Assembly (NCBI GenBank): GCA_010909165.1
Contig: MU008161.1
Span: 744,001-808,000, forward strand
DNA: 64,000 bases
DNA from: Anthoceros angustus
Lineage: Eukaryota > Plantae > Anthocerotophyta
Direction of reading: 5' to 3'
Both the position numbers and the translations under genes were made by a program. Below are positions 25,901 to 51,355 of this stretch, piece after piece. Positions within the stretch are counted from its first letter, which is position 1, and every line of letters begins with the position of its first letter. The notes beneath the pieces are model-generated. The model did no database searches. It saw nothing but the letters and a program-made list of their open reading frames with translations, and was not told where the DNA came from.

Positions 25901-26030
25901 AGCCGCGGCGCAGCACGGTAACGAGGGAACCACAGCTTGCTGCTCCGGAGGAGGAGAGGAGACTGCTGTCCTGTCCTGTGCTGTGAAGAGCAGAGCAGGT
26001 TGCAGTGGAGTGGAGTGGAGTGGAGTGGGT
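22955..26030. repeat. Cluster of short GC-rich microsatellites (mostly pentamers) upstream of and within the TIC leader
   Basis: (CCAGT)n about 22962, (GGCCA)n about 23010, (GGGACT)n about 23631, (CGGGT)n about 23977, (GGGCA)n about 24112, (CGCCT)n about 24745, (CCTTG)n about 25252, (GGCCT)n about 25280, (GGAGT)n about 26007. Confidence 0.85.
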
Positions 26031-29600: not shown

Positions 29601-32600
29601 AGCAACTTCAGGGGGCCCCTCCGGCTCTGCGCCTGTGATAAGTCCACCCAATGTGGTGCAGTCAGGAACGGTGTCCTCACCACATGTTCCAGTGGTGAGG
29701 AACAACTCTCTGGAAAAGAAAACAACAGTTCCAGAGAAAAAAATTGCCAAGCCAGAAGGTAGCATTGCTTCATCTGTTGAAAAGAGGACTGGGCCTGCGC
29801 TGCTTTCTGGTGATCGAAAGCAGTTTCCAGCCAATGCTTCTCCTGCTACTCCGCCTAATAGGGATGTTGATATCACTGTCAACAACCCTACCAATGACTC
29901 TAATTCACTCACAAAGCTGGAGCTTGGTCAAAGGTATTACATCTTCCTGGACTGACCACCTGCTAGTGATCCAACTCTATTGTGATTGCAGCTGACCCGT
30001 GTTACTATCGTTTGCAGACCCCAGCTGGCTGCTTCCAGTGAGACTGGCAGATCAGGAAAGCTTGACATTGACCTGATGGTTTGTACCTTCTTCCCTCAAA
30101 GGCCAGTGTTTAGTGCAGATGACAGCTGTGCCAGTTTCTGAAATTGTTCATATTCTGCAGGCTCTTCCACCCAAAACAAGTGATCTCCCGACTGCAGGAG
30201 ATGCGCAGGAAAAGCCCTTGGTATTGTCGATGTCCTCGCTCGAATGAGCATTGATGTGCATCTGTCCTTCATCCTTCCTTCTTTGAGACGCTCATCTGAC
30301 TTAACCTTCTCATTGCAGGTTGATTTGTCAAATCCCCCAGCTGCAGATAGTAGCTGGATGGAGAGAGAAAGGGAAAGGGAAGCGGAGAGGGAGAGGGAGA
30401 GGGAGAGGGATTGCGAAAGAGAGAAAGAACGAGAGCAGGAACGAGAAAGAGAGAGGGAGAAGGACAGGGAAAGGGAAAGGGAGAAGGAGAGGGAGAAGGA
30501 GAAGGAGAAGGAGAGGGAGAGGGAGAGGGAAAGGGAGAGGGATAGGGAGAGGAGAGGAGAGGGAGAGAGAGAGAGAGAGAGAGCAAAAAGAGAAAGAACA
30601 GGAAAGGGAACAGGAGAGAGAAAGGCAGAGTGAAAGGGACAAAGAGCGAGAAAAAGAACGCGAGAGAGCTGACATGAGCAAACAAGCTGCCCAGAAGCAG
30701 AGCAAAGGAGCAAAGGTTCCTGATTTCAGGGTTAAGCCAGCAGAACGTGCAGGTTTGCTTGTGTACTGGTCTGTCTTTCCCCCGTATTTGACTTCTTGCC
30801 CTGACAAGCCTCTATGTGAGGAAGAAGAACTTTTTTGTCTCACAGTTAACATCCGTGATTTTTCTGAATTCTCAGCTTCTTCAACTCCTGCCTCCGCTGC
30901 CTCCTCATTCTTGGCTTCTGGTCCTCCAGCTGGAAGCAGCGGCTCTAGTAGCGTGACCACCAGTGTGGGTGCACTTCCCATTTCTATGGGCATGTCTGGC
31001 TGGCCCTATGGGTAATTTGACCAGACCATATCCTTGTGTTAATCTTGCTGTCCACTTGATGGCCCTCCTTGACTGACGAAATTGTTTTTTTTTTCAGGTA
31101 CTATGGATCTGCAGCTGCTGCTGTAGCAGCTGCTGCTTGCTCTTTAAATGCAGCTATCCCAGCAGAAGAAAACAACAACCCTCCTGCTGTCCAGGTCTCC
31201 TCCCTCAACCATGTGATCGTACCTAGTGTAATTATATGCCTTCCCTTTTTATGCTGATTTTGTCAATATTGTTGATTACATTTGTCATGGTGACTTCTGC
31301 ATGCTCTTATTTCCATGTGGGTTAGTGAAAAGATTGTGTGGTGTTCGTTATCTTAAGCAGGTTGCACCTTATCCGGTAGCAAGAAACACCTGGAAGCGCT
31401 GTGCTTCACATGTATATATTGCTCATTTCATTGATTACCAACAACAGATCAGTCGTCATCCTTATTTTGGATCAGCCTATCAAAACGCAGCAGCTGGTGT
31501 GTTTGGGGGAAAGCCTTACAACCTTAACGTGCCTCTAGTCCCTCAAGAGACCATGTTTGGCAGTGCATCAGGGGCAACTGGTGCTGCAGTTTCAGGTGCA
31601 CCTGCAGCAGGTGCAGGACCTCCCAGCACTGGGCTGGGTGCTGGAGGCATGAATGAACGAAGTCTTGGAGCTGCTGCACTTGCAGCAGCTGCAAATGCAC
31701 AGGCAGCCAAAGAACGAGCAGCTGCCCCTTATATCGATGTCCTTTCTAGGAAGCAAGCCTCACAGCAGCAGCATGCTGCCCATCAGCCGCAAGGTTTAAC
31801 GCTGCAGGTGACTTGTCTCTCCTCCCTGATCCAGTTGCGTGGTTCATGTAATTTGCTTCACAGAAGGCTTGTAGTTGACCATATTGAGCTCTTTATCACA
31901 GGCTGGCGCAGCGTATGGGTTCCCAGTCACTCAGGCTGGGTCTGCAGCTGTGGGAAATGGTGGGGCAAGCAGTCTATCTGCTAATGGGGGGGCAGGTGGC
32001 ACAGGTCCTGGAGTTCCCATCATTAGTGGCTCCTCCGCAGGTACAAACACCTCTGTTGGCGGTGCAGGAGCTGGAGCTGGAGCCAACAATGGCTCATTGG
32101 CCAATGCTGCAGCTGCACAGGCCCAAATGCTGCAGCAGATGATGCAGCAGACTGGCTTTCCTTTTACATTCCCTACTCATTTTCCGCCCACTTTTAATGG
32201 TGCAGCCAGTCATCTTACTCCCCAGCAGGTACTGTCTGCTGTTCTTGAATTTCGGAAGCTTATGTTTCAAGTCAAAGTTTGATGACCGGCATTGTTCTTT
32301 TTCGTCAGTCATTGCAACAAAAATAGGCTGTCCTCTCATGAGCCACCGCCGTTTGCCACCCTCTGTGATTGCAGGCTCAGTATTTCAGTCCCTTCTACCC
32401 CCATCTGGTTCCCGCACATCTGGCGCAGAACCAGCAGTCAGGAAATGCTTCTGCAGCCTCGCAGAAGCAGCAGCAGCAGCAACACTCTTCACAGCAGCAG
32501 CCTCAACACTCACAGCAGCAGCAACATGCTCAACAGCTGCAGCATGGAGTGCGGAATTTCTCTTCTACATCTCCACAACAGCCACCACAGTCGCCATCCC

Positions 32601-35038
32601 AATCTCAGCAAGCTCAATCTGGATCTGCTTCACTGCAGGCGCAGCGACAGCATGACAGGGAGACTTCTGTTACAGGGGAGGGCTCCACAGCTGACAGCAA
32701 GTTCCCGATGAGGATGTACAGTCAACCTTCATCAAACGGCTTGGTTTCTACTGCCATGGCTGCCCAGTCTGCAGTGCTTGCTGCAGGGATGCAGCTGCAT
32801 GGTCCAGAATATCTTATGGCTGGTTTGGGTGGGAAGCAAATGAGCAAGCAACTCCAGCAACAAGTGATGCAGCATCCACATCAACAGTCACAGCACCAGC
32901 AGGCCCTATCAGCTGGGCCCATGCAAGTGCCCCCATCTCAGTCTTTATCTTCTCAGTTGCAACAACAAGGTCCAGCTTTGCAGATGAGTTTGAAGGGCCT
33001 TGACTCACAACAGGCATCACAAGCTTTCTCTGCTATGTCAATGGCCGCTATGAATCGAGGAGCAGTGGGCCCTGGGCCCCTGGGACTTGCAAGTGTAGCT
33101 GCTGTGATGGCTCCGCAAGGTCATGCCATGTTGCAAGGTGTGGTGGACCCTAGCCGGGCTCACTCTCAGCTTCAACAAAGTTCGCATCATTCGGCTGTCA
33201 GTGTTCAAGCCCACCAGCAGCCAATTCAGCAGGGAACTCCTCAGCATCAACAGCGTTCGCTGCAGATGCCACGTGAAGAAAACAGATCGATGGTGGATGG
33301 GAGTAGCTACACAGGCAGTAGCCGGGCAAGAGATGGTACCGACGAGCGGAAGGTCTCTGGGAAGCGAAATTCTGGCTCTGGGTCGCCCATGTCCCGCGTA
33401 GATCTTGAGAGTCTCCCAGGCATGCCTGGACCATCATCATCTGGAATCCCAGCCGCTCGGCTTGTGAACAGTGTGGGCCCAACACTGAACTTGATGACCC
33501 CAGCAAGTGGGGTGCTGTCCACCCGATCCTCTGGTGTGGCCTCTGGAGGAGGGCCTCCAGTCAATCAGAAGCAGGTGATGAATCGCAACAAAGCTGTTGC
33601 CTCTTCAAATGTTGCACCAGCATCAGGGCCAGCTGTATCGACCCTTTCTTCTTTTCAGGACAGATCTGCCTTACAAGCTGGCCTGTCGACTAAGTCGTCT
33701 GGACCTGGTTTGGCTTTGCCGCTGGGACAAAATGCTGTGGGTACCAGCCAAGGTCAAGGTATGAGGCAGCAAGTGCCTCCAGTGAAGCAGCAGCAGCTTC
33801 CTACAAGAACCTTGGGCGGCCCTCTGCCAACTGCCTCTGGCTCAAACCCTCAGGCTGTTCTGGCAGGAGCTATCAAAAGCTCCCAGAGTCAGCAAAGTCC
33901 GCGGCACAGTCAGCAACCTGTGCAGAGCGGGAGTCCTGCTGCAAGGATGTCGTCTGGTCCTGCTGGTTCACCATCCTCTGGCTCACTGCCCTTGCCTCCC
34001 CTTCCACCCACCTCAAAATCTACAGGGACTGTTGTTGCCAAGGCTACAGCAGCAGCTAACAAGGTCACATTCTCGGCAACTCAGAAGTCATCTGCATCAG
34101 TTTCAAGCAAGAGGTCCTCAAGCGCCCTGGCTACCCATAGTTCTTCTATCTTGGGGCCAACACCTCAGACTGGGACAGCCAAGCTTTCCCAGCAGATGCC
34201 TCAGCAAAATCAGCATCATGGGAGTCATCAGCCACAGGTTTCCTCACAGGTGCAACAGCAGCAGCTGCCAACGTCACCCCTTTCATCAACTTCTCTTGGA
34301 CCGCCACAGCAGTATCATGCAGTGCATGCTGGCCAAGCACAGGCTCATCAAAACAACAAGCAGACAATGCCACAGCTTCAGCAGGCATCACAGCAGCCGC
34401 AACACCAGCAGCAACACCAGCATCAGCAGCAACAACACCAGCAGCAGCAACACCATCAACACCAGCAGCAGCAGCAGCCGCACCATCAACACCAGCAGCA
34501 GCAGCAACATCAACAGCAGCAGCTACAACAACAGCATCAGCAGCACCAGCAGCCGCAACACCAACAGCAGCACCAGCAACAGCAGCACCAGCAACAGCAG
34601 CACCAGCAACAGCAGCACCAGCAACAGCAGCACCAGCAGCCGCAGCAACACCTGCAATCGCAGCAGCAGCAGCCACAGCAGCCCTCATCACCATTGCCGC
34701 CAGCTACTGTTGGACCTTCACAGCAGCAGTCTGTTCAGCAGTACCATCCACAAGCACACAGTGGGCTGCAGAAACAGAGTTTAACACAGCAGCAGGTGCA
34801 ACAGCAGGCCCAGCAGCCACCGCCTCAGCAGCAGCAGCAGCAGCAGCAAATGCAAGTAACCAGGCAAATGTTTCAGAGTCAGCAGCAGTTTCTGCAGCAG
34901 CAGCAGCAGCAGCAGTCACCAACACAGGTGGATTCTCGGGCTCAGCAGCAGCAGCAGCAGCAGTTGATGCAACAGCAGTTACAGCCCCCATCCTCGCAGC
35001 AGCTGCAACAGCAACCTAGCGTTGTTAATCAGTCCTGA
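26610..35038 (+). CDS. TIC: TIME FOR COFFEE homolog (multi-exon; one apparent frameshift in the Glu/Arg repeat)
   Basis: MDRSREGRR..., PTVPRKART, EQEVEVAEALFDLAR, APKRKRPR, KLDIDLM, ER-repeat, MGMSGWP, WKRCASHVYIAHFI..QQ and QAQYFSPFYP match TIC motifs in order. The terminal exon of about 890 codons is Q/S-rich and ends at TGA 35038. Confidence 0.9.
26648..27957. repeat. Tandem duplication of about 655 bp covering the 3' part of TIC exon 1 and intron 1
   Basis: GTGTGCCTGTCTCCGCACC recurs about 653 bp later. The copies differ almost only by small indels. Junction microhomology is GTGGTGTG. Confidence 0.92.
34370..35015 (+). repeat. Coding poly-Gln/His tract (CAG/CAA/CAC)
   Basis: Long QQQHQQQ runs in the last TIC exon, including a 15-nt CAGCAACAGCAGCAC unit repeated several times at about 34569-34635. 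Confidence 0.95.
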
Positions 35039-35213: not shown

Positions 35214-36197
35214 TGACCAGTCTCTTGCAGCGCGAGTCTCCTCGACCCAAGGCAGTGAGGATCACGGAAACCGTGCGCAGATATCCGCAACCTCTGCTTG
35301 CAAAGTAAAGGCTTCATTTACTTATTTTAGCATGTTTAAGCTTGGCCTGTTTCGCCGTTCACGTGGGAAGTTTCGCTGCGTGGGGCCTGCCTCCCAGGGC
35401 TGAAGGCCGCGGGATGTGGTGTGGCCTGGAGGAGCACAGCAGCTGGCTAGCCCTCATTCCATTCTAGCAGTTCGCGTAGCACAGCATAGCAGAGCAGAGC
35501 ATGGCGGAAGAGCATGAGGCGGAGGATTGGCGCGCGCTGCCGGTTAAGCTGCAGCAGCTGCTGGTAGATCTGGGCCGGAATGCCGTGTCCCATACCCGAT
35601 CTGCATAATGAAGAAGAGTATGGCGGCTACTTCACTGGGCGAATCCGTGGTGATGAGGGAAGGCACTGGCGAGTGCGCAAGCGGTGTTGACAGCCATTGC
35701 CAACTGCCGCAGTCTCTTGCAGCGCGAGTCTCCTCGACCCAAGGCAGTGAGGATCACGGAAACCGTGCGCAGATATCCGCAACCTCTGCTTGCAAAGTAA
35801 AGGCTTCATTTATTTTAGCATGTTTAAGTTTGGCCTGTTTCGCCGTTCATGTGGGAAGTTTCGCTGCGTGGGGCCTGCCTGCCAGGGCTGAAGGCCGCGG
35901 GATGTGGTGTGGCCTGGAGGAGCACAGCACCTGCCTGGCCCTCATTCCATTCTAGCAGTCGCATAGCACAGCATAGCAGAGCAGAGCATGGCGGAAGAGC
36001 ATGAGGCGGAGGATTGGCGCGCGCTGCCGGTTCAGCTGCAGCAGCTGCTGCTAGATCTGGGCCGGAATGCCGTGTCCCATACCCAGCCTGCATATTGAAG
36101 AAGTATGGCGGCTACTTGATCGAATCCGTGGTGATGAGGGAAGGCACTGGCGAGTGCGCAAGCGGGTGTTGACAGCCATTGCCAACTGCCGCAGTCT
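35214..36197. repeat. Tandem duplication of about 490 bp covering the promoter and first about 70 codons of the TRN1-like gene
   Basis: TCTCTTGCAGCGCGAGTCTCC at 35221 and 35712; ATGGCGGAAGAGCATGAG at 35501 and 35988; junction microhomology CAGTCTC. Confidence 0.92.
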
Positions 36198-39100
36198 CAG
36201 TTCATAACCATTGGGGAGTGGGCCATCGGCTTGGATCGGGAGGATGAAGTGTCGGTTCTGTTGGGGGCCTGGCGTCCAACCCTTCCCTGGAATATCTGGA
36301 TGTTCCTGTGAAGGTTTTGGAAGGCAGGCGGCTTGCGAGGCTCTGGGCCAGCTTGTTGCATCCAGTCGCAGCCTAGAAGCGCTTTCAGCAGAGGCGGTTG
36401 GGCTTGATGCCGCGGGACTGGGTGCCTTGGCCAAGCTTCAACAAGGATTCTGTCCTGGAGAACTTGAACTTACGATGGAACAAGGTGGGAGGTGCTGAAG
36501 GGGCACAACACCTGCGGCTCCCCGTCTCAAGGATCTGTCACTGAAAGACATCGGCATGGATGTGGCGGGAGCCCAGTGTGCTCCAGGCACTGGAGTTGGA
36601 TCATGGCGTTGCACAGTGGGATCCCATTCCCGGCGGCCTCGGGCCCATGGGCACTGTGCTCAAACATGCTTTCACCCGCGCGGGTGAGAATGCCTCCATC
36701 TCTGGCGTCACAGACCTTACGTTGCTTATCTCGAAGGATGGGGAGGCAGGCCTGGCAGACGCCCTGGCCGGAATGCTGCGCACCAACGATCGTATCGAGA
36801 GGCTTGCCACCACTCCATATGCTCTCATCCACGGCCTGGACGGGTTACGCCACAACTCCACCATATCTCAACTTCTCTTCACGACCATCAGCTGCGACGG
36901 ATGTGGATGCGCCTTGTCCAGTTGCTCCCGGAATGCAAAGCACTGCGTGTCCTGGACTTGCATCGCTCAGGGCCACGCCTCGTTCAAGAAAGAGTTGCTG
37001 AGATCCTTGGAGGGCAACGCATCTCTGAAAAGCTCGACATTTCTCTGGGACGCCCTGGATCATGACATGTTTAGAGACTTGATGAACTGTATTCAAGTCA
37101 ACAAGACGTTACGGAGATCAACATCGGGGACAACATGGGAAGCGGAAGGAAAGGACGCAATCATCAATGCAGCCTTGGCAGGCAATGCCACTCAAGAGGC
37201 TTACTGGCCTTTGCTCGTGGGCAGGCAAGGGCCTGTGATGCCCAAGGCTGGGCGCTCTTCCTGTGCGGTGCCCTTTGGCAGGAAGACCACTCTCCGCACC
37301 ACCATGATTCGCGCATGGAGACGACACAGCCGCATCACCCGAGTTCCAGCTCAGCCAAGTTCCAGCTCGACTGAAGGGAAAAATATTTCGGGCTTGGCGA
37401 CGGATGGCTTCCGTCACCGGTACCAGAACGGAAGGCATAGAAATCGAGGTGTTGCGCAACGACCATGATATGCAAGTTACTATGTGGGATCTGGCTGGAC
37501 AAGCTCACTACCGAGCTCTGCAAGACTACCTCTTTCCGACCTTCAACCAAGCATGTGTCTTCCTGTTTGCGTTCAGCGCATCTGATGATCGGAAACGGAA
37601 ACCTCCCCAACTGCATCCGCCTAATATGCGTGATATCCTGCAGGACAGGTTCAGAAGGAGCTTGGCGTTCTGGCTTAGGTTCATCAACTCAAGTTGTCGC
37701 AACGTGGGCTCTACTTTGCCTCAAATATTTGTGGTGGCTACTCATGTGGATAAGATGAAGCGTTCTGATGCTGAAGCATTACCCAATCTCCTTCAACCCG
37801 TTCTGACAGAGTTGGCCACCGAGTTTGAACAGGTTGTTCACGTGGAAACAAAACACTCTTCTCCATGGACGCTCGATCTGCCAAGAGTGTGAAGCCCTTG
37901 CGGGACGCACTCATGGAATCGTTTCGAGCTCTATTTGCAACCAAACTGTTTCGGGTACCCGAGGTATGCAACCAATTGAGTGCTAATTTGACTGCCTGGG
38001 TATCCCAACATCCAGCTCAACCGATGGTGAGGAAACAGCAACTTCAAACTTTGTTCCAAAACGAGCTAGAGAGTCTCCACAAAGGTGGGGTTGAAGATGA
38101 GGGGGAACGATTGGGAGCCATTCTTGCCTATTTGCATGATGTGGGTGGTATCATCTGTTTTCAAGATACAGATGTTGTGGTGATAAACCCACACTGGATC
38201 AGTCACAATTTTTTAGGGCGACTCATTCAGCTTCTATCAACTTTTTGTGCGATGGTATGGTTTGTGTTTTTGGAAAGAGGACACCGGAGACATCGGTGAC
38301 CATATTGATATTCTGGTGAGGTCATCCAAGAGCATAGATGAAACTATCGAGTTTCTCAAGGAACATGTGGTTGCAAAGCTGAAATCTTTTTGTGCTTCCC
38401 CTGAAGGCAGTCCGGGAGTCGAGCTTGTGGAAGGAATTATCAGGACCGAGTGTGTCGAAAACCTCACACTCTGTATCTACCGGCATAACCAGTCAGTGCT
38501 AACGCAGGATTTGCTCAAGTGTGTTTTGCAGTCGAACAAGACTGTACAGGGGAGATTTTCTCCTCATTGGATCTGGCCGACTTCAGCTGGTCGTGGCCAG
38601 CATGTCCTGAAGCCTCTTTGGAGAGTGCCTTTGAGGGAGCTGATGAGCTTTTAAGTACTGGTGAAGTCTTGGATGTCTCGCAAAAGCGACGAACAGGTCT
38701 CCTTCAAACCATATCCAACATAGATGCAGCTGCAGAGGAAGTCCTGCCTACAGAGAAAGTGGTGCTCGAACAACAAGACGCACCAGTTCAAACGTCTCGG
38801 TTTGTCAGCATCCAACGTACTACATCCCTCCCTGGAACAACTCACTCGGAGATGGGGGAGCAACTGTTGCAAACCATCAATCAAGGGATAAGACATTTGA
38901 AGCACGAGGTGAAAGTGTTGAAGACAGAGGTGAAAAGGGAGAAGACCTTGCGGGAACATGCTCTACAATCCTTGCTTTCTAAGATGGACGAGATTATGAA
39001 TTTCTCTGCAGAATTAGAAAGCAGTCAGATACCCAGACGTCCCTACATCACCACTGCAGACGTGGGTTTAGCACAGAGATTGATTGCAGGGGTGCGTGTG

Positions 39101-39553
39101 GGCAAAGCGGCTAAGCTGCACTCCATGTGCGAAAACATCTTTGGGAATCACATCGTGCAGGGCCAAACTGGATTTGACTTGACATTGGAGGATGCGAAGT
39201 GGAGGTGGATCAGGCCCCTAGCACTCAACGGTGCAAAGCTATTGCTCTTCCTGGCCAAGGCTGGACTACATGCGACTGCCGGCATTGGGGGTTTGGTTCC
39301 CCACCCTGCCACCAGCTTGGACGGACCGGTTTCTGTGGCTGCGGCCTCTGGGGAATCAGCCCTGTCCCATTTCAATCTGGACCTGACCGGACCAGCTGCG
39401 AGCCAGAACACTCCCGTGCAAGAGGCATGGATTTCTCTGAAGAATCTTTTGCAGCCGTTGCGGAAAAGGCCTGAGGGAGGACGAGGAGTGGCATGGGTTT
39501 GCGAACGGTGTATGCGGAGGGGAATTGAGAAAAAAGTCTATCAGCCGCTGTGA
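35988..39553 (+). pseudogene. TORNADO1-like LRR-Roc-COR (Roco) gene broken by many 1-nt indels (pseudogene or uncorrected consensus)
   Basis: RI-type LRR fragments (LEALSAEAVGLDAAGLGALA; LADALAGMLRTNDRIERL), reconstructable P-loop LFLCGAPLAGKTT, G3 WDLAGQ, G4 VATHVD, COR ILAYLHDVG.I...VVINPHW, and a TRN1-type C-terminus PRRPY...LHSMCE..HIVQGQ.G...AWVCERC ending at TGA 39553. Confidence 0.85.
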
Positions 39554-41304
39554 CGGGAGCAACTAAAACGTCGTGTGTTGCAGCCTAACTTCGGCATTTG
39601 CAGGATTTGGAGAGGGCACAGGGGACGTCGGTGATCGTGTTGACATTTTGATGAGGTCTCGCAAGGGTCATCGAGTAGGACCAAACAATCGCGCTTCACC
39701 CTCGGCACTCGCGCTTTGTGCCCTTCCCTGCGTCCGGAGCTAGGATGGCGTGTGGTTGGTTAGACTGGCCGCCAGGCATTTTGGGGATGCTGGGTATGAG
39801 CTGCTGCGCTGTTTTGCAACACACCTAGGTGTGCTCGTCTTTCCTGCTCGTACAACTTGCAATTGCTAGCAAGCTTCAAGGGGTGTAGGACATAGTGTCG
39901 TGCTTTTAAGACGTGTGCTTGAACACGCTGAAGAAGGGCAGCTGTACGTAGCTCTAGTTTGCTGGGTGCAACCCCTGAATCTGATCCCTGATGTATCCTC
40001 TTCTGCCTGGATAGGATAGATTTGTGGTTGGTGAATGTTCCAGAGATGTAGAGAGCTTCCTCTTGACTGCAGCATTAGGGTTATCAGCCGTATTTGTCAA
40101 GAGATGCAGGGTTCGAGCTGCCGCACATCGAGACAGCGATCTCGAAATAAATGATGACAAACACCTTTGTCGAATTCGTCCCTTTTGGTTGTTCAAGCCT
40201 CTGACTCTTCCAGAACTGTGGAGGGCCCCTGGTTGGTGAAGGAGGGATCCTCCAGAGTGAGCATGCATCAGTGGCCAGGAATGACATCGTGCAGGGCCAA
40301 ACTGGATTTGACTTGACATTGGAGGATGCGAAGTGGAGGTGGATCAGGCCCCTAGCACTCAACGGTGCAAAGCTATTGCTCTTCCTGGCCAAGGCTGGAC
40401 TACATGCGACTGCCGGCATTGGGGTTTGGTTCCCCACCCTGCCACCAGCTTGACGGACCGGTTTCTGTGGCTGCGGCCTCTGGGGAATCAGCCCTGTCCC
40501 ATTTCAATCTGGACCTGACTGACCAGCTGCGAGCCAGAACACTCCCGTGCAAGAGGCATGGATTTCTCTGAAGAATCTTTTGCAGCCGTTGCGGAAAAGG
40601 CCTGAGGGAGGACGAGGAGTGGCATGGGTTTGCGAACGGTGTATGCGGAGGGGAATTGAGAAAAAAGTCTATCAGCCGCTGTGACGGGAGCAACTAAAAC
40701 GTCGTGTGTTGCAGCCTAACTTCGGCATTTGCAGGATTTGGAGAGGGCACAGGGGACGTCGGTGATCGTGTTGACATTTTGATGAGGTCTCGCAAGGGTC
40801 ATCGAGTAGGACCAAACAATCGCGCTTCACCCTCGGCACTCGCGCTTTGTGCCCTTCCCTGCGTCCGGAGCTAGGATGGCGTGTGGTTGGTTAGACTGGC
40901 CGCCAGGCATTTTGGGGATGCATGAGCTGCTGCGTTGTTTTGCAACACACCTAGGTGTGCTCGTCTTTCCTGCTCGTACAACTTGCAATTGCTAGCAAGC
41001 TTCAAGGGGTGTAGGACATAGTGTCGTGCTTTTGAGACGTGTGCTTGAACATGCTGAACAAGGGCAGCTGTACGTAGCTCAAGTTTGCAGGGTGCAGCCC
41101 CTGAATCTGATCCCTGATGTATCCTCTAGACTTCTGCCTGGATAGGATACATTTGTGGTTGGTGAATGTTCCAGAGATGTAGAGAGCTTCCTCTTGACTG
41201 CAGCATTAGGGTTATCAGCCGTACTTGTCAAGAGATGCAGGGTTCGAGCTGCCGCACATCGAGACAGCGATCTCGAAATAAATGATGACAAACACCTTTG
41301 TCGA
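39150..41304. repeat. Direct duplication of about 1.02 kb (39150-40174 and 40284-41304) with about 110-bp spacer
   Basis: ACATCGTGCAGGGCCAAACTGG...AATGATGACAAACACCTTTGTCGAA occurs twice. It duplicates the TRN1-like 3' end, a COR fragment (GDVGDRVDILMRS) and the start of the caspase-like sequence. Confidence 0.92.
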
Positions 41305-41728
41305 AAGCAATGATGACAAACACCTTTGGCTTGTTTGCCAGAGATGTACATAACTGTTTCCACTGATGGGTCTATCACTGGACACAGTTTTGCGGCAGAC
41401 AAGCCAAAGGTGTTTTGTTTTATCATTAATGCTTGTCGAGGCACCGACAACTGCCAAGGGTTAAGACGTCGAAGAGACGATGTCTTAGAGAAGCAATCTC
41501 GTCAGCAAGAGAGCTGGGAAGGTTTGACCCCTGCTTTCTGTGAGTGACTGTCTCGTCGTTTTCTCAACCAGTCATGGGAGAAGCATGTTTCAGAGATGCC
41601 GAGAGAGGGACAAAATCTATCCTCGCTTTGGTGGAAGCCATCGTTGAGGCCTCTCTAGTTAGCAGATTGTAGGACAGCGGCTCCAAGCTGATGTGTTTGT
41701 AGCTGGCAGTTTGACTCAGCGTCTAGTA
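41150..41728 (+). pseudogene. Frameshifted caspase-like (peptidase C14) p20/p10 sequence
   Basis: RDVESF..ALG, STDG, KPKVFCFIINACRGTDNCQGL (Cys at 41434). With single-base corrections it continues TPASVSDCLVVFSTSHGEACFRDAERGTKSILALVEAI and later Q....GSLTQRLV. The catalytic His region is not recognisable. Confidence 0.6.
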
Positions 41729-42339
41729 CAGTCCTCCGCTCGGCCAACTGAGCTAAAGTCGGAGCCTGCGGACGTGCGAGTCCTTTGCAGTTATTCAAGT
41801 CGCATTCAAACATCCTGCGTCATTGCAACACCGAGAATGTTGCAGCAATGGATTCACGAGTTCTTGCCAAACGTCTCATATCCAGGCATAGATAGTCCCA
41901 TGTGCTAGAAATCCTGGAAAAGAACGGTAGTAGAGTGTCGGTTGCTGGATCAGCAACGTCCCAATTTTGCTGGATTATGCAGCCCGCCGGAGAGATTGGC
42001 CATGGACATGGATAGAGTCATCAAGTCAAGTCTTCTACCGCTCAGCTACAGTCCTCAACCTGGTTTCAGCTTCGAGCTTTGTAGGCTGCCGCACTTAGCA
42101 CAATGGATGTAAAGCTTCGAGAGTCTGAGTGAGGGCCCCAGGAGCAAGCAGCAATTTCGGATGTTGACTTGCCTGACAAGCAGAGTGAACTTCGGTGTAA
42201 AGCGGCGGACTCAGATGACACCGAGCCTTCGTTGCACAAAAACTCTGCACCCGAAGGGCGTGAACTCCGAGACTCTTATTCACAGCTCACAAGTCACTGA
42301 ATGACGAAGAGGTATGATTCCCAGCTGGCGCAGCTCTGC

Positions 42340-42623
42340 TGGGCGGGATCTTCCAGTCTCATCAGCATGCATGAATGGCCAGTAACGACATCATGCCCTG
42401 CTCCCTGCATTGTTGCCTGCTTGCAAGCTGCAGAGAATGGTGGATCCTGCATGAGATGGTGAGGCATATGCCAGTGTGGATTAGGGTGTTGCAGGTGGTT
42501 GCAGCCAGGTTGTCAAGGTTCCGATTCGGATTAGCATATGCCACCTTGTTGTGCAAGTCTTGTGAGCAACTGCACCGCATCGGCTTGCTCCTCAGCTGGC
42601 TGCAACAGGCGGGTTCAGGATGA
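42340..42623 (+). pseudogene. Degenerate fragment of another TRN1-like C-terminal region
   Basis: 42345-42395 resembles 40244-40290 at DNA level. NDIM...VWIRVLQVVAARLSRFRFGL loosely parallels NDIV...RWIRPLALNGAKLLLFLAKAGL. Confidence 0.4.
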
Positions 42624-43020
42624 TGACGTCTACCATTGCGTAGATGCGAAGCGAACGATGATCCTTGAGTCCCCAGCTTCTCCGAATTGGAAACCGAGCT
42701 TGTTAGGGTAAAGCATGTACTTCAGTAGATTGTTCAGGGCACGGCATCACCTAGCACCTAGCTTGCTGGAGCTGGGCCCAGGATCTTGTCAAGCAGAGGT
42801 TGCGCATATCTGCGCACGGTTTCCGTGATCCTTACTGCGAACAAGATCCGCATATGCGCCACGTTTCCTTGAAACACCACGGGAACGAATCTAGTTGCAA
42901 ACTGCAATGAACAGAAATCTCAAACTCGTCTACAAACAGATTCGTGGAGCCAACTGATCCAGTTAATGGCCATCGGAGTGTACAGCGCCTCTCGTTATAA
43001 TGAAAAATCACGTTTTCAGA

Positions 43021-46000
43021 TTACACATGGCCGACCAAATTTTGTACCAAATCCTCTACAAAATTTTGACTGTCTACGTGCGCCATCTGAAGCCGGACAC
43101 AGCAGAAGCGGGCGTACACACTTTCCAGCTGTGGCAAGTTGAACCCCTCCGTCTGCAAGACAAGCCTCTCCACTAAATGTTGACTCTGATGTTTGTCCAA
43201 TTGACCACGTCCGTCTCCATCATCACCATCGCCATTTTCTAACGCATGCTCTCCACCGACCTCCATTGTCTCTGCTGCGTCTTCCAACACACTCGAAGCA
43301 AAGGTTTCTGACGTCTGCGTCTTGCAGCTGTCAGGCTTGTTTTGGGAGTTCTCGAACTCAGCAGCGCCAGCTGTGGGGGACTCCTGCCCTACTTGTTCGG
43401 GGACCAGCTCTTCAATATTGTGCTTCAGAGACTCTGGCTCCACTGCCGTTTCATCCACTGCAAAAGTAGGCATAGGCGGGCTTTCAACAGCCATCTCACA
43501 TGCAAACTCCCCTGCCACCTCACCTGCATCCATCGTTGCTGCCCAGTGTTAGAAAATGATCAAGACAGCTATTGTAGATAGAAAACTCAATCTGCACGTG
43601 CCTTGTTGCAGACCTTGATTGCTCGCGGTTGGACCCTTGATTGGACCCTTGATTGGGATGCCGGAACTTCCAAGCGGATTGGGGAGACGAGAGGCGGAAT
43701 TGGGCCTTTCGGTTGGTCCACCCTGGGCGGCAATGGCATCACATTGTGCCACTAAGGCAGGTTCCAACTGTGAAAGCATTCCGTGCACCTATTGCAGGAC
43801 GGATTTGGTTCATTCATAGTCAACCGAAGCTGTAGCGGCTTTAAACATGGGAAAACAGGCAATAAAATCATACCAAATCACGAAGTGCACATGCTTTACT
43901 GTAGATTCGACTAGTTGTGTAGTCACTACCATTGTAGGCCTGTCACATATCGGAATGTCCTGTTAGAGTTGGCATCTTAATGTCGAAATCCTCCACCGGC
44001 AGAAAGCACTCTCACATACCTTAGCATTGGCAGGAATTAGCTCCACATCTTCCACAAATCCTGCACGAGTCACATAGTAACCAGAGTCGACTCGTTGCAA
44101 TAACGTGGCTACATCCATCGGAGTTTTTACAAACTTGCAGTAATCTGGTGCGTCTTGATCTGTCACTGGATAGTGGAATATGCCGAAGTGCTTTTCATGA
44201 AGCAGACTACAACCAGGAGGAAGAGCAGTCAGTTCTACTCAATACACAAACTCGAAAGGGACACAAACAAACAGACATCTATTCAGGCAACATTACCTAT
44301 TGCAGACATCCCTCAGACACATGCGAAGACGACGAACAGCATGTTCCTCAAGGTCTGCCCGCGCAAGCAGTTCAGCCTCACTAGGACACTTGTCTACAAT
44401 AGGCGCCTTTGGAAGGGTGGGAAGTGGGGCCTTCTGCTTCAACTTCTTCCTTGACTTGCGATTTGAGAGTGCTGCTGCTGATTCTACCATTTGAGAAAAC
44501 AGCGTCCTTCTATCTCCTTCTGATGGAAGCTTCAACTCATGCCTGTGAGACATGCAATCATGAACATCAGATTCTAACTCTTTCCCTCTAAGAAGATGGA
44601 TTGGTATCAACTACTCTCAAATAAAGTAGATAGCGAGCCAACTTACACAACGTGACCAAACATGCCGAAGGCTTCCTGATCTAATTCCTTGGGAGAAACT
44701 GATGCAGTGCCTAATAGCAGCACCGGAAGGTCAGGTGGAACCTCAGACAGAAGCATTAAAAGGACTGCACGTAGCTGGTCATGTGCCTGCATGACATCAC
44801 TCCACCTCGTCAACATTCTCTCTTGGTTTCTGAGATTTACATCACCCAAGGCATAGTCCAACACAACCAAGTTCAAACTTCTCTCCACTGCCTTGCATAG
44901 CATTTCAGGAATGGATATACTTTCAGAAACAGGTATGCAGCTTCTTACTGTTTCCCACCAAAGCTGTAGCTGAGGGAGATACAGAACTGATGGAGTACAA
45001 CGGCGAGCCTCTTGAAAAACGTGGACCAGTGCCTCTTCAGGACTCTTCGCACTAGCATCCGAAAGCAATGCAGGAAGGCTAAGAGAGTGAACGGGATATT
45101 TTTCCAGCTCATGAAGAATTGCTGGTCCGACATAGTCCTGTCAGTTCCACCAAACAGGAATTGTAGCTCAGGCATTGCAAAAACAATGAAGCGGAAAGGG
45201 AATTGATTCATAACTCACCAAACCAGTTCCCTCCACACCGCACACCAAAAACCTTGGTCTGTACACACGAGACACTGATGAGCTCCGAAATGGAAACAGT
45301 CTAGCAAGCTGTTCACCAGTTTCTTCCTCGTCAGAAGAAATGCCACCATCGTTACCCTCCAGTGAGAATATTTCATTAATGCCACTCATGATAGCCTTAA
45401 CTTGCTCTTGCAGACATAAAGCGACCTGCATAGGCAAAGGCCGTGCATGGACCAGGGCTCCTCTGTGCGCAGCTGGTGTAATTGAAGACATAGCTTCAAG
45501 GAAGTGTCGCTTTCCAACCTCAATGGAATCCAAGTCCAAAACATACTGATCATCATTGTTGTAGACCTGAGGATACTTCTTTCGGAATGCTCTGATTGCT
45601 GCTTCTGTGCATAATGCCTTCAAGTCTGCACCACAGTAGCCCACACAGGAGGCTGCAAGTTCTGCCTTCAATTCCTCTGTTGGCGGTACTACCCACTTCC
45701 TGGTATGAATGTCCAGAATTTCTGCTCGAGCTTTCAAATCAGGTAAAGGAAACACAAATTCTCTATCAAACCGACCAGGCCTCCTCAGTGCACTATCAAT
45801 GGCATCAACCCTATTGGTTGCACCAATGACCACAACCTGCCCCCGGGAATCAAGGCCATCCATCAAAGCCAGTAGCGTTGAGACAATGGAGTTATGAATC
45901 TGTTCCTGTTTGCTTGAGCGCACCGGCGCCAGGCCATCTATCTCGTCAAAGAATATAATGGAGGGCTGACAGCGTTGGGCTTCCTCAAATAAAGCTTTGA

Positions 46001-47851
46001 GCTGTCTCTCAGCCTCTCCTACCCACTTGCTCAGCACATCAGCACCTTTGCGCATGAAAAAACTAACTTTTTTCCCTGCCTTCGATGCTTGAGCAGCTAG
46101 AGCCCTAGCCACCAAAGTTTTGCCAGTGCCAGGTGGCCCACAAAGCAGGACCCCTCTTGGTGGAGTGATATGATAGTTGGCAAAAAAATTAGGATACATC
46201 AAGGGGAAAAATACCATCTCCTTTAAAGAATTGATGTAGCTGGACAGACCCCCAATCTGGTCAAAACTCACCGATTCATCCACAACTACTGGCTGAATGT
46301 CAGCCCCGCCTTTGGAAGTCGGTCCTGCAGTTTGAGCCCCCGTTCCGCTTCCGATGGAGCCCCAGTGATCATTCTGATTTGGAGCTCCCCATCCTGTACC
46401 AGTAGCATTCAGGTTCCAACTTGCAAAGGCATTGACGTCCCCAAAACTCCCAGGAGGAAGGAAGGGAAGGCCAGAAGAACGGCATGATCGGGCCCATGTA
46501 CCACCAGGTGCCTGATCCATCTCGTCCACAAGGAGAGAGTCATCAGAATCCCCAGCTCGCTGCCTCTTAAAACCACGCGAGCTACTTGTTCTACCTTCCC
46601 GGCCTCGCTTCGTACCAGTCCCTGCATGATACAGTTTGCGAGGAGATCGTGCACGAGAGGCCTGCTCTTCTCTACGTGGCGAGAAACGCTGCACCTCAGT
46701 TCGGCTCCGTAGAGCATAACGACGCCTGCCATCCCCTTCGTCGCCTTCATCGCCTTCATCCTCCTCTTCTCCCTCCTCCTCCTCTCCATTATCAGCGACC
46801 TCTCGATCATTCCGGTCCTGCTTCAGTTTCCCTTCTTGCTCCTTCTGCCGAGCCTTCTTCCGCTCCTCTTCCTGCTCATCCTCCTCCTCCTCCTCCTCTG
46901 CACCTCCAACCTCCATTTCATCGTCCTCCTCCGAGGAGGTCTCTTCCTGATCATCCGAATCCTCATCCTCCGAATACTCCTCCTCGGACAGATATTCCTT
47001 CCTCTTGGTCCTGCTTTTCTTGCGAGGCCGCAGCCCTGCCCTCCTTGGAGGCTCTTTCCTGCGCAATTTCTTTATCGACCGAAACCCATGTCTCCTGGAC
47101 ACCTGCACAGCTCCCACTAATCAGCCCCGCCATACCCGGCCACGTATAAAATCCGTCTCCCAAAACCACCGCTTAGCATACCCACCCTTACAGGTCGGGC
47201 ATCGTCCGCCTCACTGTCGGAATCCAGCCCCATGTACGTCGAGCGTCTCTTTCTGGTGGAGCGACGAAGGCTCGTCCCGTTCGGCTGCAGCAAAAGCACT
47301 CAACTCCTCAATCCGCAACCTGACAACCTCGCGCACCTGGTCCTCGTAGCTCACAAGACACAGTCATGTCACAAAACACGTCACCGTACCTGCAACGGCT
47401 CCGCAGCAGCATCCTCGGGCTGGCCCCGATCAGGGTGCGCCGGTTGCCGAGTCATGTTGTCCTGGCAGCACACAGAGGAAGAAATCAGCAAACAAGAATC
47501 GTGTCCCTGCTCTTGTGCTCCGTTGCAGGAAGGCTCCAGCCGACTAGCCGACATGGCAAGCTAACAATGCCGTGGCAGGAGCACGCAGACCAGGCCTGCT
47601 GGCTTGTCCTCCATGCACTTCCGTCGGGCTGGCTCGAACCTCTTAGCGATCTCGGAGGCAGGGGGCCGGCCCTTGCCCTTGCCCGTCACCTTGCCAGCAG
47701 AGTAGCCAGGCTTGTGGAAGTGGCCGAGGCCAAGAGCGCGGGTGCGCAGGCGTGTGATGTGCACTTCGCTGCCTGGCGGAAGCGGGAGCGGGAGGGGGAG
47801 GCCCCGCTGCTCAGCCAAGCCCTGGGGATCCCCACGTCCCGAATCTTCCAT
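43021..47851 (-). CDS. BRAT1: ATAD2/Yta7-like AAA+ ATPase with bromodomain (multi-exon)
   Basis: N-terminal exons (ASEIAK.., LRRSTRKRR), acidic tract, GVLLCGPPGTGKT, FFMRKGADVLSKWVGEAERQL, IIFFDEIDGLAPVRS, second AAA PSVLYLPQ, bromodomain DAPDY..FVKTPMD, and C-terminal LVLQTEGFNLPQLESVY. ATG 47851, stop 43021. Confidence 0.93.
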
Positions 47852-50047: not shown

Positions 50048-51355
50048 TCACGATCCCGAGAGCTCGCGGTCGGGCAGCTTCCACTTGCTATACCAGTGAA
50101 TGCTAACTCTTGACCATAACGGAAAAATGAAATCGCTCAAAGGTTCATCAACTGGCCCATCCAGCGTGAGAGGAAGCCAAACATAACGTGAATCTCGAAG
50201 GTCAGAAGGCTTCCATCTATCCGCCATAAATATATAATAATCAGGGATTCCAGGCACTGGCAGCACAAAAGTACCTTGTGCATAGAATGTTTTGGAGGTG
50301 AAATCCGAGCTTCCTCCCACACAAGGATTCCCTAAAGTTTCCCATAATCCCATCATGGACTCGGAAGCATGAACGAGGGCTCCATTGGGTGCCCATCCTG
50401 TGCATCCTGAAGTTATCATATAGTAGTTGCCTCTGTTTTTGAATACTGCAGGTGCTTCTCGTTTCTGTTTGATAAACAACCTCGTCATATTGCTCTCCAG
50501 AGCCAAATAATTGTCCGTCATAACCCCAATGTGCAACTCGGTGTTGTCCAGGGCCGAGTAGATTACATATGCCTTCCTATCATCGTCCTTGAAAATGGTC
50601 ATATCTCGGCTGTCATAACCATGAGGCCTCCTGCTTCCGAGGTACAGAAACGGCCCCTGAGGTCTGGCACTGACGGCAATCCCGACGGAGGCCTTGGAGT
50701 AGTTAGCACTGTCTACATGCATCCACATGACATAGGTGTCGGTGAGTTCGTTGTAGATCACCTTTGGCCGCTCCACCACCTTGCTAACATGCAGGTCACT
50801 CTCCTCATCCGTGTTGTCTGGTTTGAGCACTGTGCCCTCGAAATTCCAGTTCCACAAATCCTTGGAGGAATAGCAGTTGATCCCCAGCACATCCACCCGC
50901 GCCAAGGCGCCTTTGCGAATATGGTAGGTGCGGCCGTCCTTGTTCTCTCCATACCAGAAGAAGGTCTGGCTCTTGTCATCAAACATGACTCCACCCCCAT
51001 GTGCCTGAATCGGTCGCCCCTGCGTATCCCGCCACTCCCGCCCCGGATAATAGTACATTCTCTCGCTGCTGTTGGCCCTGAGGGGGTTCACAGCCAAGCT
51101 CTTGTCCGGGAACAAATGCGTCCCACCAGCCCGCTGCTCGCCCCACGCCACCGTGCCTGCCAAGGGCACGTCCTCCAGATTGGACAGGGTCCGCCATTGC
51201 TGCCGGTTCCTTCCCGAGGGTGTGAAGTCGAGCGGCGCAAACAACGTGTAGATCTGCACAAGCAGGATCCAGGCTGCCAGGAAGCAGACAAGGTTGGTCA
51301 CACTGCACCTGCGTCGCACAGCCTGCACTGCCGTAGGTGGCAGATGCCGCACCAT
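50048..51355 (-). CDS. Glycoside hydrolase family 43 (GH43_24-type exo-beta-1,3-galactanase-like), type II membrane protein, intronless
   Basis: 435-aa ORF with N-terminal TM, IQAHGGG, WYGENKDG, YSSKDL.NW, VERPKVIYN, SRDMTIFKDDD, REAPAVFK and ITSGCTGWAPN. Confidence 0.93.
   Translation of the reverse strand: MVRHLPPTAVQAVRRRCSVTNLVCFLAAWILLVQIYTLFAPLDFTPSGRNRQQWRTLSNLEDVPLAGTVAWGEQRAGGTHLFPDKSLAVNPLRANSSERMYYYPGREWRDTQGRPIQAHGGGVMFDDKSQTFFWYGENKDGRTYHIRKGALARVDVLGINCYSSKDLWNWNFEGTVLKPDNTDEESDLHVSKVVERPKVIYNELTDTYVMWMHVDSANYSKASVGIAVSARPQGPFLYLGSRRPHGYDSRDMTIFKDDDRKAYVIYSALDNTELHIGVMTDNYLALESNMTRLFIKQKREAPAVFKNRGNYYMITSGCTGWAPNGALVHASESMMGLWETLGNPCVGGSSDFTSKTFYAQGTFVLPVPGIPDYYIFMADRWKPSDLRDSRYVWLPLTLDGPVDEPLSDFIFPLWSRVSIHWYSKWKLPDRELSGS

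What the first reader, a model, noticed from the sequence alone, without database searches (positions are those of the whole stretch)
41150..41728. Hidden animal-caspase-like p20/p10 sequence in a land-plant locus
Seen: the + strand reads STDG...KPKVFCFIINACRGTDNCQGL, then a linker of about 30 aa. Removing one T from TTT near 41536 and one G from GGG near 41577 extends it to TPASVSDCLVVFSTSHGEACFRDAERGTKSILALVEAI, and after one more shift to QADVFVAGSLTQRLV. Known: caspases (C14A) carry KPKLFIIQACRG, then EADFLYAYSTxPGYxSWRxxxxGSWFIQxL, then QxPxxxSxLTKxLY in this order. Land plants are generally described as having metacaspases (DSCHS-type motif) rather than caspases. Inference: this is a copy of a caspase-architecture gene family in this plant. 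The His-containing strand looks deleted or garbled near the small duplication at 41281-41328, so this copy is dead or mis-assembled. Intact paralogs may exist elsewhere.
Basis: partly seen in the sequence, partly recalled or inferred. Interest (0 to 1): 0.88.

Follow-up and report, generated by a model that had tools for sequence, protein, structure and literature searches.

The report
Dead caspase-type relic in plant
A land-plant locus holds a broken, half-length remnant of a protease domain of the animal caspase type, folded back on itself and copied many times in the genome; this copy is dead, but it shows that caspase-type genes, said to be absent from plants, have lived in this plant.

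Summary
The core observation holds. On the + strand, 41395-41445 encodes a caspase active-site cysteine strand (ADKPKVFCFIINACRGT). After a linker of about 30 residues and two +1 frame shifts, 41531-41669 encodes the caspase small-subunit strand, loop (with the pocket arginine) and helix.

I built a profile from 53 real caspases fetched from metagenomes. The piece read with X at the breaks scores 37 bits against it (profile positions 140-219; shuffles reach 12.6 at most). The small-subunit part, which had no role in choosing the profile sequences, is the best hit of the whole window: 34.9 bits against 17.1 for the next.

Not confirmed:
- the third motif (QADVFVAGSLTQRLV);
- 'STDG' as the histidine site;
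- any N-terminal half of the domain.

Everything left of about 41370 is an inverted copy of the cysteine strand, forming a strong foldback.

Short-read contigs show about 13 to 65 copies of these stretches in the genome. A paralogous copy spanning the second frame break has no indels there. So this is a dead fragment that was amplified, not an assembly error.

It lies 2.9 kb downstream of a decayed Roc-COR (Roco) gene. The neighbouring gene is clearly of land-plant type.

The scan has already noted Roco-caspase genes, said to include intact ones, on other DNA of this genome. I could not test that here.

The parts
41395..41445 (+). Caspase active-site cysteine strand, frame A: ADKPKVFCFIINACRGT. 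The Cys codon is 41434-41436. There is a 2-residue insertion, and N stands where caspases mostly have Q.
   Evidence: Caspase profile positions 140-158; E=5e-5 against all six-frame pieces of the window. Natural caspases with INACRG occur among the metagenomic set.
41446..41530 (+). Inter-subunit linker (about 30 residues, Arg/Asp/Gln-rich). It holds the first +1 frame break at a place that cannot be located.
   Evidence: The linker length matches the caspase consensus (about 34 versus about 32 residues). A paralogous contig over 41416-41530 has 0 gaps.
41531..41569 (+). Small-subunit (p10) beta strand, frame B: LLSVSDCLVVFST.
   Evidence: Rank 1 of about 128,000 window positions for profile positions 181-193, at 14.4 bits.
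41571..41669 (+). p10 loop and helix, frame C: VMGEACFRDAERGTKSILALVEAIVE..., ending at stop 41670-41672. The Arg codon 41592-41594 aligns with the pocket arginine of caspases.
   Evidence: Rank 1 for profile positions 194-219, 20.5 bits against 12.6 for the next. Joined to the strand by a +1 shift it scores 34.9 bits against 17.1. Full alignment.
41301..41381 (-). Left arm of the foldback: an inverted, truncated second copy of the cysteine strand. The minus strand reads LCTSLANKPKVFVIIA, with canonical caspase spacing, and then breaks.
   Evidence: 63 of 73 aligned bases are identical to the right arm 41360-41439. Caspase profile positions 134-150, E=0.008 window-wide. RNA fold of 41290-41450: -67 kcal/mol, z about -8 on both strands.
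41273..41328 (.). 28-nt unit in two tandem copies, made of the outer part of the left arm.
39144..41305 (.). Tandem duplication of a unit of about 1131 bp (39144-40277 and 40278-41305, 97.7% identical). It ends inside the left arm, and each unit carries a short COR-B-like fragment (39612-39665, 40743-40796).
37308..37889 (+). Roc GTPase domain of a decayed Roco gene.
   Evidence: Pfam Roc E=3.9e-5, 24.3 bits, below the 27-bit cut-off. PDB Rab-23 E=0.004.
37865..38651 (+). COR-A (37865-38296) and probable COR-B (38247-38651), in different frames.
   Evidence: Pfam COR-A E=4.4e-5, below cut-off. PDB Chlorobium tepidum Roc-COR 3DPT/3DPU E=0.004-0.008. COR-B is assigned by position and by its repeated fragment only.
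35400..37465 (+). Leucine-rich-repeat-like ORFs upstream of Roc, with a 492-bp tandem duplication at 35218-36198.
   Evidence: Read by eye. Pfam is blank for the two long ORFs scanned (36492-36998, 36560-37465) at E 0.01. Duplication. Low confidence.

Best explanation
This is a pseudogene fragment: the C-terminal third of a caspase-type (C14A-like) protease domain. It runs from the active-site cysteine strand, through the inter-subunit linker, to the first strand, loop and helix of the small subunit.

What was lost or broken:
- The N-terminal half, with the catalytic histidine, is gone. At about 41370 it was replaced by an inverted copy of the cysteine strand (a foldback).
- Two +1 frame shifts and a stop break what remains.
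- A 28-nt and a 1131-bp tandem duplication abut the foldback.

It cannot make a protease.

The fragment sits 2.9 kb downstream, on the same strand, of a decayed LRR-like/Roc/COR gene. It most likely descends from a Roco-caspase fusion gene of a family that multiplied in this genome. That step is inferred from position and from unchecked notes of this scan.

The dead unit, foldback included, was itself copied later: about 9 identical copies of the foldback, and 13 to 65 copies at 90% identity or more of its neighbouring stretches.
For: Shown:
- A profile built from 53 full caspase domains finds the cysteine piece first in the window, E=5e-5, and its inverted copy second, E=0.008.
- The p10 segment was not used to pick the profile sequences. 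It is the window's top hit at 34.9 bits against 17.1 for the next. Its two halves are each rank 1 and abut with a 1-base offset.
- The X-joined read gives one domain hit of 37.1 bits over profile positions 140-219; shuffles reach 12.6 at most.
- Identity to animal caspases is 29-36% over 79 columns. Animal caspases among themselves have a median of 39%.
- Foldback: 63 of 73 bases match between the arms, z about -8.
- Depth is 130-670 across the relic against 10 in the single-copy flank.
- A 129-nt contig with no difference lies over 41313-41441 at depth 88.
- Paralogous contigs over 41416-41530 and 41529-41639 have substitutions but 0 gaps.
- Roc and COR lie upstream.
- The neighbouring ATAD2-like gene has land-plant best hits at 56-68% identity.
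Against: - Standard libraries barely see it: Pfam C14 E=0.13; PDB E about 0.4; nothing for the p10 pieces alone or for the p10 part read with an X at the break against PDB.
- An exhaustive phmmer of the 73-aa ORF against 1.84 billion proteins gave nothing.
- The cysteine motif alone is not proof. A Trichodesmium ORF that I read as dehydrogenase-like carries KPKSFLINACRG and scores 18.9 bits on the same profile positions.
- My profile sequences were chosen with a pattern inspired by this motif, so the cysteine-strand E-value is partly circular.
- The same p10 stretch also resembles the histidine strand (DCLVVFSTSHG), though less well: 20.8 bits, rank 3.
- The link to the Roco gene is by position only. 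No single ORF or transcript joins them here.
- Depth from summed contigs is a rough copy count.
Confidence: 0.82

Rival explanations
1. The dead fragment was picked up and multiplied by a mobile element or by segmental duplication. It would then have no ancestry in the Roco gene next to it; the adjacency is an accident of a repeat-rich, rearranged region.
For: - The depth is uneven, between 4 and 65 copies along 40150-42780.
- Eight contigs leave the window sequence at 41714.
- The foldback is identical in about 9 copies although its arms differ by 14%.
- The Roco gene and the relic are separated by an unexplained 344-aa ORF and by duplications.
Against: - No terminal repeats or other mobile-element hallmarks lie in 41650-42900.
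- No transposase or reverse-transcriptase ORF is in 39500-42900.
- COR-B-like fragments sit between the Roco gene and the relic, as expected of a broken Roco-caspase copy.
- Other notes of the scan place the same domain at the tail of Roco genes (unchecked).
Confidence: 0.2
2. The foldback has been put to use. It is transcribed as a hairpin RNA and yields small RNAs against the most conserved coding stretch of the caspase-type family, in the way young plant microRNA genes arise from inverted duplications of their targets.
For: - The hairpin is strong on both strands: -67 kcal/mol, z about -8.
- Its arms are the active-site coding stretch.
- A contig identical over the whole hairpin stands at about 9 copies.
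- Contigs of an RNA library cover it.
Against: - No small-RNA data were examined.
- The RNA library may contain DNA, and its depth sums all copies.
- Rfam gives only far sub-threshold generic hairpin matches.
- Foldbacks are a common by-product of rearrangement.
Confidence: 0.08
3. It is a working gene spoilt by assembly errors: the two breaks are homopolymer miscalls and the histidine strand lies in an upstream exon.
For: - Candidate sites for both breaks fall in or near short base runs (TTT at 41535-41537, GGG at 41576-41578).
- A follow-up note on another locus of this genome says RNA reads the domain intact there (unchecked).
Against: - Contigs of a short-read run cross 41416-41530 and 41529-41639 with substitutions but no gaps.
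- The foldback centre is covered by an identical short-read contig.
- No N-terminal half or histidine strand is found anywhere upstream in any frame.
- The frame ends in a stop 18 residues after the helix begins, and the C-terminal strand is missing.
Confidence: 0.03
4. It is a chance resemblance, or a relic of an unrelated family that shares the KPK..INACRG motif, such as a D-2-hydroxyacid dehydrogenase.
For: - A Trichodesmium dehydrogenase-like ORF has KPKSFLINACRG and scores like the window piece on the cysteine strand.
- NCBIfam gives the 73-aa ORF an unrelated chance hit at E=0.002.
- The protein atlas does not recognise it.
Against: - The p10 strand, loop and helix follow at the caspase spacing and are the window's best matches by 8-18 bits.
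- The bacterial mimic does not align beyond profile position 160.
- Pfam lists Peptidase_C14, not a dehydrogenase family, for the piece.
- The inverted copy adds the caspase-specific C..LA.KPK context.
- In 120 metagenomic matches to the motif pattern, only two are obvious chance hits. 53 carry a full caspase domain, and most of the rest show caspase features by eye though cut by contig ends or introns.
Confidence: 0.02

Closest known systems
Animal caspases (MEROPS C14A, e.g. caspase-3; PROSITE caspase cysteine signature)
   Same: - KPK-hydrophobic-ACRG cysteine strand.
- Linker of about the same length.
- p10 strand with D.L...ST, a loop with Gly and the pocket Arg, then G...I.AL helix, in the same order.
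- Identity of 29-36% to metagenomic animal caspases, at the low edge of what animal caspases show among themselves.
- INACRG occurs in real caspases.
   Different: - No histidine strand, N-terminal half or C-terminal strand.
- A 2-residue insertion in the cysteine strand.
- Two frame breaks and a stop.
- Lies in a land-plant genome.
- Multi-copy and folded back on itself.
Plant metacaspases (C14B)
   Same: Same protease clan and overall fold family; the only C14 members generally described in plants (PMC5756287; 10.1101/2023.04.28.538660).
   Different: From established knowledge, metacaspases carry a D-S/A-C-H-S-G-type cysteine site, cut after Arg/Lys and lack the KPK..ACRG and ST..G..R motifs. 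The general Pfam C14 model gives this piece only 12.4 bits, whereas a caspase-only profile gives 37 bits for the read-through. I had no metacaspase sequences to score directly.
TORNADO1-type plant Roco proteins (LRR-Roc-COR)
   Same: Roc and COR, preceded by leucine-rich-repeat-like ORFs, lie upstream on the same strand. The review PMC4104024 describes plant Roco proteins as N-terminal ribonuclease-inhibitor-like LRRs plus a C-terminal Roc-COR.
   Different: - As described there, Tornado1 ends with Roc-COR; here a caspase-type relic follows 2.9 kb downstream.
- The Roco gene here is split over frames, and its domains score below the Pfam cut-offs.
Young plant hairpin-RNA/microRNA loci born from inverted duplication of a target gene
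   Same: A foldback of about 70-80 nt per arm, made of coding sequence from a multi-copy gene family, with very stable predicted folding.
   Different: No small-RNA evidence; no Rfam family. This is a resemblance of form only.
Bacterial conflict systems with caspase-like effector domains fused to NTPase switches (PMC7159879)
   Same: The logic suggested by the locus: a nucleotide-dependent switch with repeats next to a caspase-superfamily peptidase. Many of those peptidase domains are inactive.
   Different: Those are prokaryotic, with STAND or other NTPases. The domain here is of the animal caspase type, in a plant, and is a dead fragment.

Membership tests
Caspase (C14A) | Active-site cysteine in a KPK-hydrophobic-Q-A-C-R/Q-G strand | tested here: met
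   KPKVFCFIINACRG at 41401-41442. It has a 2-residue insertion and N for Q. Profile positions 140-158, E=5e-5 window-wide. Caveat: a bacterial dehydrogenase-like ORF mimics this motif.
Caspase (C14A) | Catalytic histidine strand (hydrophobic run then S-H-G), about 40 residues before the cysteine | tested here: not met
   No hit to profile positions 1-139 on either strand near the locus. Upstream of about 41370 the DNA is the mirror copy of the cysteine strand. The only SHG (41571-41579, frame B) lies downstream and fits the p10 position better.
Caspase (C14A) | Small-subunit strand, loop with the pocket arginine, and G-S-W-F-type helix, after a linker | tested here: met
   41531-41669 through one +1 shift scores 34.9 bits against 17.1 for the next best. 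Both halves are rank 1 in the window, and the Arg is kept at 41592-41594. GSWF is replaced by GTKS.
Caspase (C14A) | C-terminal strand (Q.P...S.LTK.LYF) | tested here: not met
The best local match in +40950-41800 ranks 253rd in the window and lies at 41301.
Caspase (C14A) | One open reading frame through the domain | tested here: not met
   Three frames are needed; stops at 41545-41547 and 41670-41672.
Caspase (C14A) | Cleavage after aspartate | not testable with these tools
   Needs an intact paralog and an enzyme assay.
Metacaspase (C14B) | D-S/A-C-H-S-G-type cysteine site, without the caspase p10 motifs | tested here: not met
   The site reads NACRG and is followed by the caspase-type p10 motifs. 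The comparison with the metacaspase motif rests on established knowledge, not on sequences scored here.
Roco protein (LRR-Roc-COR) fused to the protease domain | Roc GTPase followed by COR on one chain | tested here: inconclusive
   Roc scores 24.3 bits and COR-A 23.8 bits, both below the Pfam cut-offs, but they are adjacent and in order. PDB gives Rab-23 and C. tepidum Roc-COR at E about 0.004. The two domains are in different frames.
Roco protein (LRR-Roc-COR) fused to the protease domain | Protease domain on the same reading frame or transcript as Roc-COR | tested here: not met
   2.9 kb of an unknown ORF, duplications and a foldback lie between them. No joining contig was seen, and the stretch I laid reads on began at 40150.
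Hairpin-RNA / microRNA gene | Stable foldback precursor | tested here: met
   -67.4 and -66.7 kcal/mol, z -8.0 and -8.2.
Hairpin-RNA / microRNA gene | Small RNAs processed from the stem | not tested
   Also, no small-RNA library was examined.

The most novel reading that the evidence does not exclude
The relic is debris from a living, recently expanding family of caspase-type proteases tied to Roco GTPase receptors in a land plant. Its foldback is built from the family's most conserved coding stretch and is kept identical in about nine copies. On this reading the foldback is a hairpin-RNA gene that holds the family in check, as miR482/2118 does for plant NLR receptors.
Probability: 0.07. Interest if true: 0.85.

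Novelty: new variant of a known kind. Interest (0 to 1): 0.6.

Why it matters
Reviews state that caspases are confined to animals and that plants have only metacaspases (PMC5756287; 10.1101/2023.04.28.538660). This locus gives statistical proof, independent of any annotation, that sequence of the animal caspase type exists in many copies in a genome whose neighbouring gene is plainly of land-plant type. That sequence includes the arginine that in caspases helps form the aspartate pocket.

The copy itself is dead, so it says nothing about function. It does three other things:
- It supports the scan's notes of a Roco-caspase family on other DNA of this genome.
- It shows the family turns over quickly, through duplications, a foldback and amplification of dead units, as immune-receptor families do.
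- It supplies a ready test set (profile and coordinates) for counting intact and dead members.

I found no paper describing caspase-type domains or Roco-caspase fusions in plants.

Tried and rejected
- Public-database searches with the decayed pieces were all blank. These were phmmer of the 73-aa ORF against 1.84 billion representatives and word-indexed searches with the 344-aa ORF and the 73-aa ORF. The protein atlas, PADLOC and an exact 23-nt search of metagenomes also gave nothing. A look-up of the 302-aa ORF found it not on record.
- NCBIfam gave only a chance hit, BufA2 at E=0.002. This is a warning about short Cys-rich pieces.
- My idea that 41155-41313 (VVGECSRDVESFLL...) is the N-terminal part of the large subunit is rejected. 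It has no profile support, rank above 500, and its end is the mirror copy of the cysteine strand.
- The reading of DCLVVFSTSHG as the histidine strand in a permuted order scores 20.8 bits, rank 3. The p10 reading scores 34.9 bits. Rejected as the less likely reading.
- A 'histidine-strand' top hit at +22451 is an AT-rich chance match without SHG.
- The motif pattern found no viral hits.
- The contig of a related species (L121) ends at the 3' end of the neighbouring gene, so it gives no synteny information.
- The scan's findings index returned nothing for a search by sequence.
It was scored only inside scripts.
Full report
WHAT IS THERE

The + strand ORF 41326-41544 (73 aa) contains ADKPKVFCFIINACRGT. 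The next two frames read LLSVSDCLVVFST (41531-41569) and VMGEACFRDAERGTKSILALVEAIVEASLVSRL-stop (41571-41672).

STANDARD LIBRARIES ARE NEARLY BLIND TO IT

- Pfam Peptidase_C14 gives E=0.13 for the ORF and nothing for the other pieces.
- PDB's best hits are all caspase-3 around QACRG, but at E about 0.4.
- The p10 pieces alone give nothing against Pfam or PDB. The p10 part read with an X at the break gives nothing against PDB.
- An exhaustive phmmer against 1.84 billion proteins finds nothing.
- NCBIfam even gives an unrelated chance hit at E=0.002.

On these results alone the finding would be undecided.

AN INDEPENDENT TEST

I scanned public metagenome contigs with a degenerate DNA pattern for K-P-K-x-F-x-I-x-A-C-R-G. 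This gave 120 loci. Two are obvious chance hits. Most of the others read as real caspases, with S-H-G upstream and the small-subunit motifs downstream; some are cut by contig ends or introns. Several carry INACRG, as the window does. From the 53 loci with a full domain I built a profile of 269 positions.

Results against that profile:

- Against all 2260 six-frame pieces of the window, the cysteine piece ranks first (E=5e-5, profile positions 140-171). A minus-strand piece, 41371-41231, ranks second (E=0.008, positions 134-150). Nothing matches positions 1-139.
- The profile sequences were chosen by the cysteine motif, so that E-value is partly circular.
- The small-subunit part is not circular. 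An ungapped scan of both strands allowing one frame shift puts positions 181-219 at +41531 with 34.9 bits. The next best of about 128,000 positions has 17.1 bits.
- Without any shift, the strand (positions 181-193) and the loop plus helix (positions 194-219) are each rank 1 in the window, at 14.4 bits and 20.5 bits (next best 12.6). They abut with a 1-base offset.
- The piece read through with X at the two breaks gives one domain hit of 37.1 bits over positions 140-219. The best of the scored shuffles reaches 12.6.

A control shows why the p10 part matters. The same pattern in 185,579 bacterial and archaeal genomes hits twice. One hit is a Trichodesmium ORF that I read as a 2-hydroxyacid dehydrogenase. 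It has KPKSFLINACRG and scores 18.9 bits on the cysteine strand, as much as the window piece, but does not align further.

WHAT IS NOT THERE

- The third motif (QADVFVAGSLTQRLV, 41683-41728) has no profile support. Most other copies leave the window sequence at 41714.
- No histidine strand or N-terminal half is detectable.
- DCLVVFSTSHG resembles the histidine strand, but that reading scores 20.8 bits (rank 3) against 34.9 for the p10 reading.

THE FOLDBACK

The RNA fold of 41290-41450 is -67 kcal/mol with z about -8 on either strand. The arms are 41301-41381 and 41360-41439. They are inverted copies with 63 of 73 bases identical and several small indels, centred near 41370.

The left arm, read on the minus strand, gives LCTSLANKPKVFVIIA. 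This fits the caspase consensus (C.tLa.KPK.F.I.A) with canonical spacing. It is therefore a second, truncated cysteine strand in head-to-head orientation.

The outer part of the left arm is repeated as a 28-nt tandem pair (41273-41328). It also marks the end of a 1131-bp tandem duplication (39144-40277 and 40278-41305, 97.7% identical).

COPIES IN THE GENOME

I laid contigs of a DNA run and an RNA run of the same organism on 40150-44500. Summed word depth is 10 in the unique flank from about 42800. It is 38-670 across 40150-42780: about 130-140 over the cysteine strand and linker, and 671 over 41610-41755.

- A 129-nt contig identical to 41313-41441, that is the whole foldback, has depth 88.
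- Paralogous contigs over 41416-41530 and 41529-41639 carry five substitutions each and no gaps.

So the second frame break, most of the linker that holds the first, and the foldback are features of many copies. They are not errors of this assembly, and a dead unit has been multiplied. Contigs of an RNA library cover the region, but that does not prove transcription of this copy.

CONTEXT

Upstream on the same strand lie a Roc GTPase piece (37308-37889) and COR (37865-38651). Both score below the Pfam cut-offs, but they are adjacent and in order, and are backed by PDB hits to Rab-23 and to the Chlorobium tepidum Roc-COR structure. Leucine-rich-repeat-like ORFs precede them.

Between COR and the relic lie:
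- a 344-aa ORF without relatives;
- short COR-B-like fragments at 39612-39665 and 40743-40796;
- the duplications described above.

Plant Roco proteins are described as LRR-Roc-COR only (Tornado1; PMC4104024).

Notes of this scan on other DNA of the same genome report LRR-Roc-COR-caspase genes. They also report decayed copies at the tails of broken Roco genes, and say intact expressed relatives exist. I could not test those claims. They fit what is seen here: position, strand and multi-copy depth.

IS IT A PLANT?

The neighbouring minus-strand gene (42758-47117) is an ATAD2-like AAA/bromodomain gene. Its named best hits are almost all land plants (angiosperms, gymnosperms, a fern), as 'At1g05910'-type proteins at 56-68% identity. 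An RNA contig shows GT-AG introns of 80-90 nt in it. The relic lies 1.1 kb from that gene's 3' end. It is present in the organism's own DNA reads in many copies, and is only about 30-36% identical to animal caspases. Contamination is therefore excluded.

VERDICT

This is a real but dead relic of a caspase-type domain. It has the cysteine strand, linker and first part of the small subunit. It lacks the catalytic histidine half, is broken by two frame shifts, and is fused to its own inverted copy. It is embedded in a rearranged, multi-copy region next to a decayed Roco gene.

It does nothing as a protease. The only open functional possibility is the hairpin, which I rate as unlikely. Its value is as evidence for a caspase-type family in a land plant, contrary to the usual statement that caspases are confined to animals (PMC5756287; 10.1101/2023.04.28.538660). 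I found no paper on such plant domains or on Roco-caspase fusions.

Noticed in passing
window 42758-47117 (-): ATAD2-like AAA plus bromodomain gene of the plant 'At1g05910' type. It has a 648-aa AAA ORF at 45168-47117 and spliced exons with 80-90-nt GT-AG introns down to about 42940. The best named relatives are land plants at 56-68% identity.
   Followed up: partly
window 35252-35303 and 35744-35795 versus 42838-42786: A 52-nt stretch of the last exon of the ATAD2-like gene (reads VRITETVRRYAQPLL) recurs inverted, twice, at the left edge of the Roco region. The whole 7.6-kb Roco/caspase debris is therefore bracketed by inverted copies of a neighbour-gene fragment.
   Followed up: partly
window 35218-36198: Tandem duplication of a unit of about 492 bp (94.6% identical) at the start of the Roco region.
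   Followed up: no
window 38519-39553 (+): 344-aa ORF between COR and the relic. It has a coiled-coil-like stretch, no Pfam family and no relative of 189-602 aa in the protein collection. Its last 155 residues are repeated at 40220-40681 at 70% protein identity.
   Followed up: partly
window 5660-8961 (+): Ty1/copia-type retrotransposon pieces: gag, Pol beta-barrel domain and RVT_2 reverse transcriptase.
   Followed up: no
window 32369-35038 (+): 889-aa glutamine-rich ORF with long poly-Q/H runs and no Pfam family, directly upstream of the Roco region.
   Followed up: no
window 50048-51355 (-): ORF with a glycosyl hydrolase family 43 domain (E=1e-14).
   Followed up: no
window 24000-28800 and 55400-57600: Blocks of 61-66% G+C with long overlapping ORFs on both strands (up to 600 aa). 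No Pfam family was found in those tested.
   Followed up: no
window 10968-11040 (+): Rfam calls a tRNA here (43.7 bits), but ARAGORN finds none.
   Followed up: no
window 59470-60606: Pairs of six-frame pieces about 624 bp apart (e.g. 59869-59982 and 60493-60606) give identical profile scores, which suggests a tandem repeat in the A+T-rich end of the window.
   Followed up: no
L122 (Trichodesmium erythraeum IMS101) 7366-7400: An ORF that I read as a 2-hydroxyacid dehydrogenase (not scanned against Pfam) carries KPKSFLINACRG, a near-perfect mimic of the caspase cysteine signature. It is a useful false-positive control for motif-based caspase calls.
   Followed up: yes
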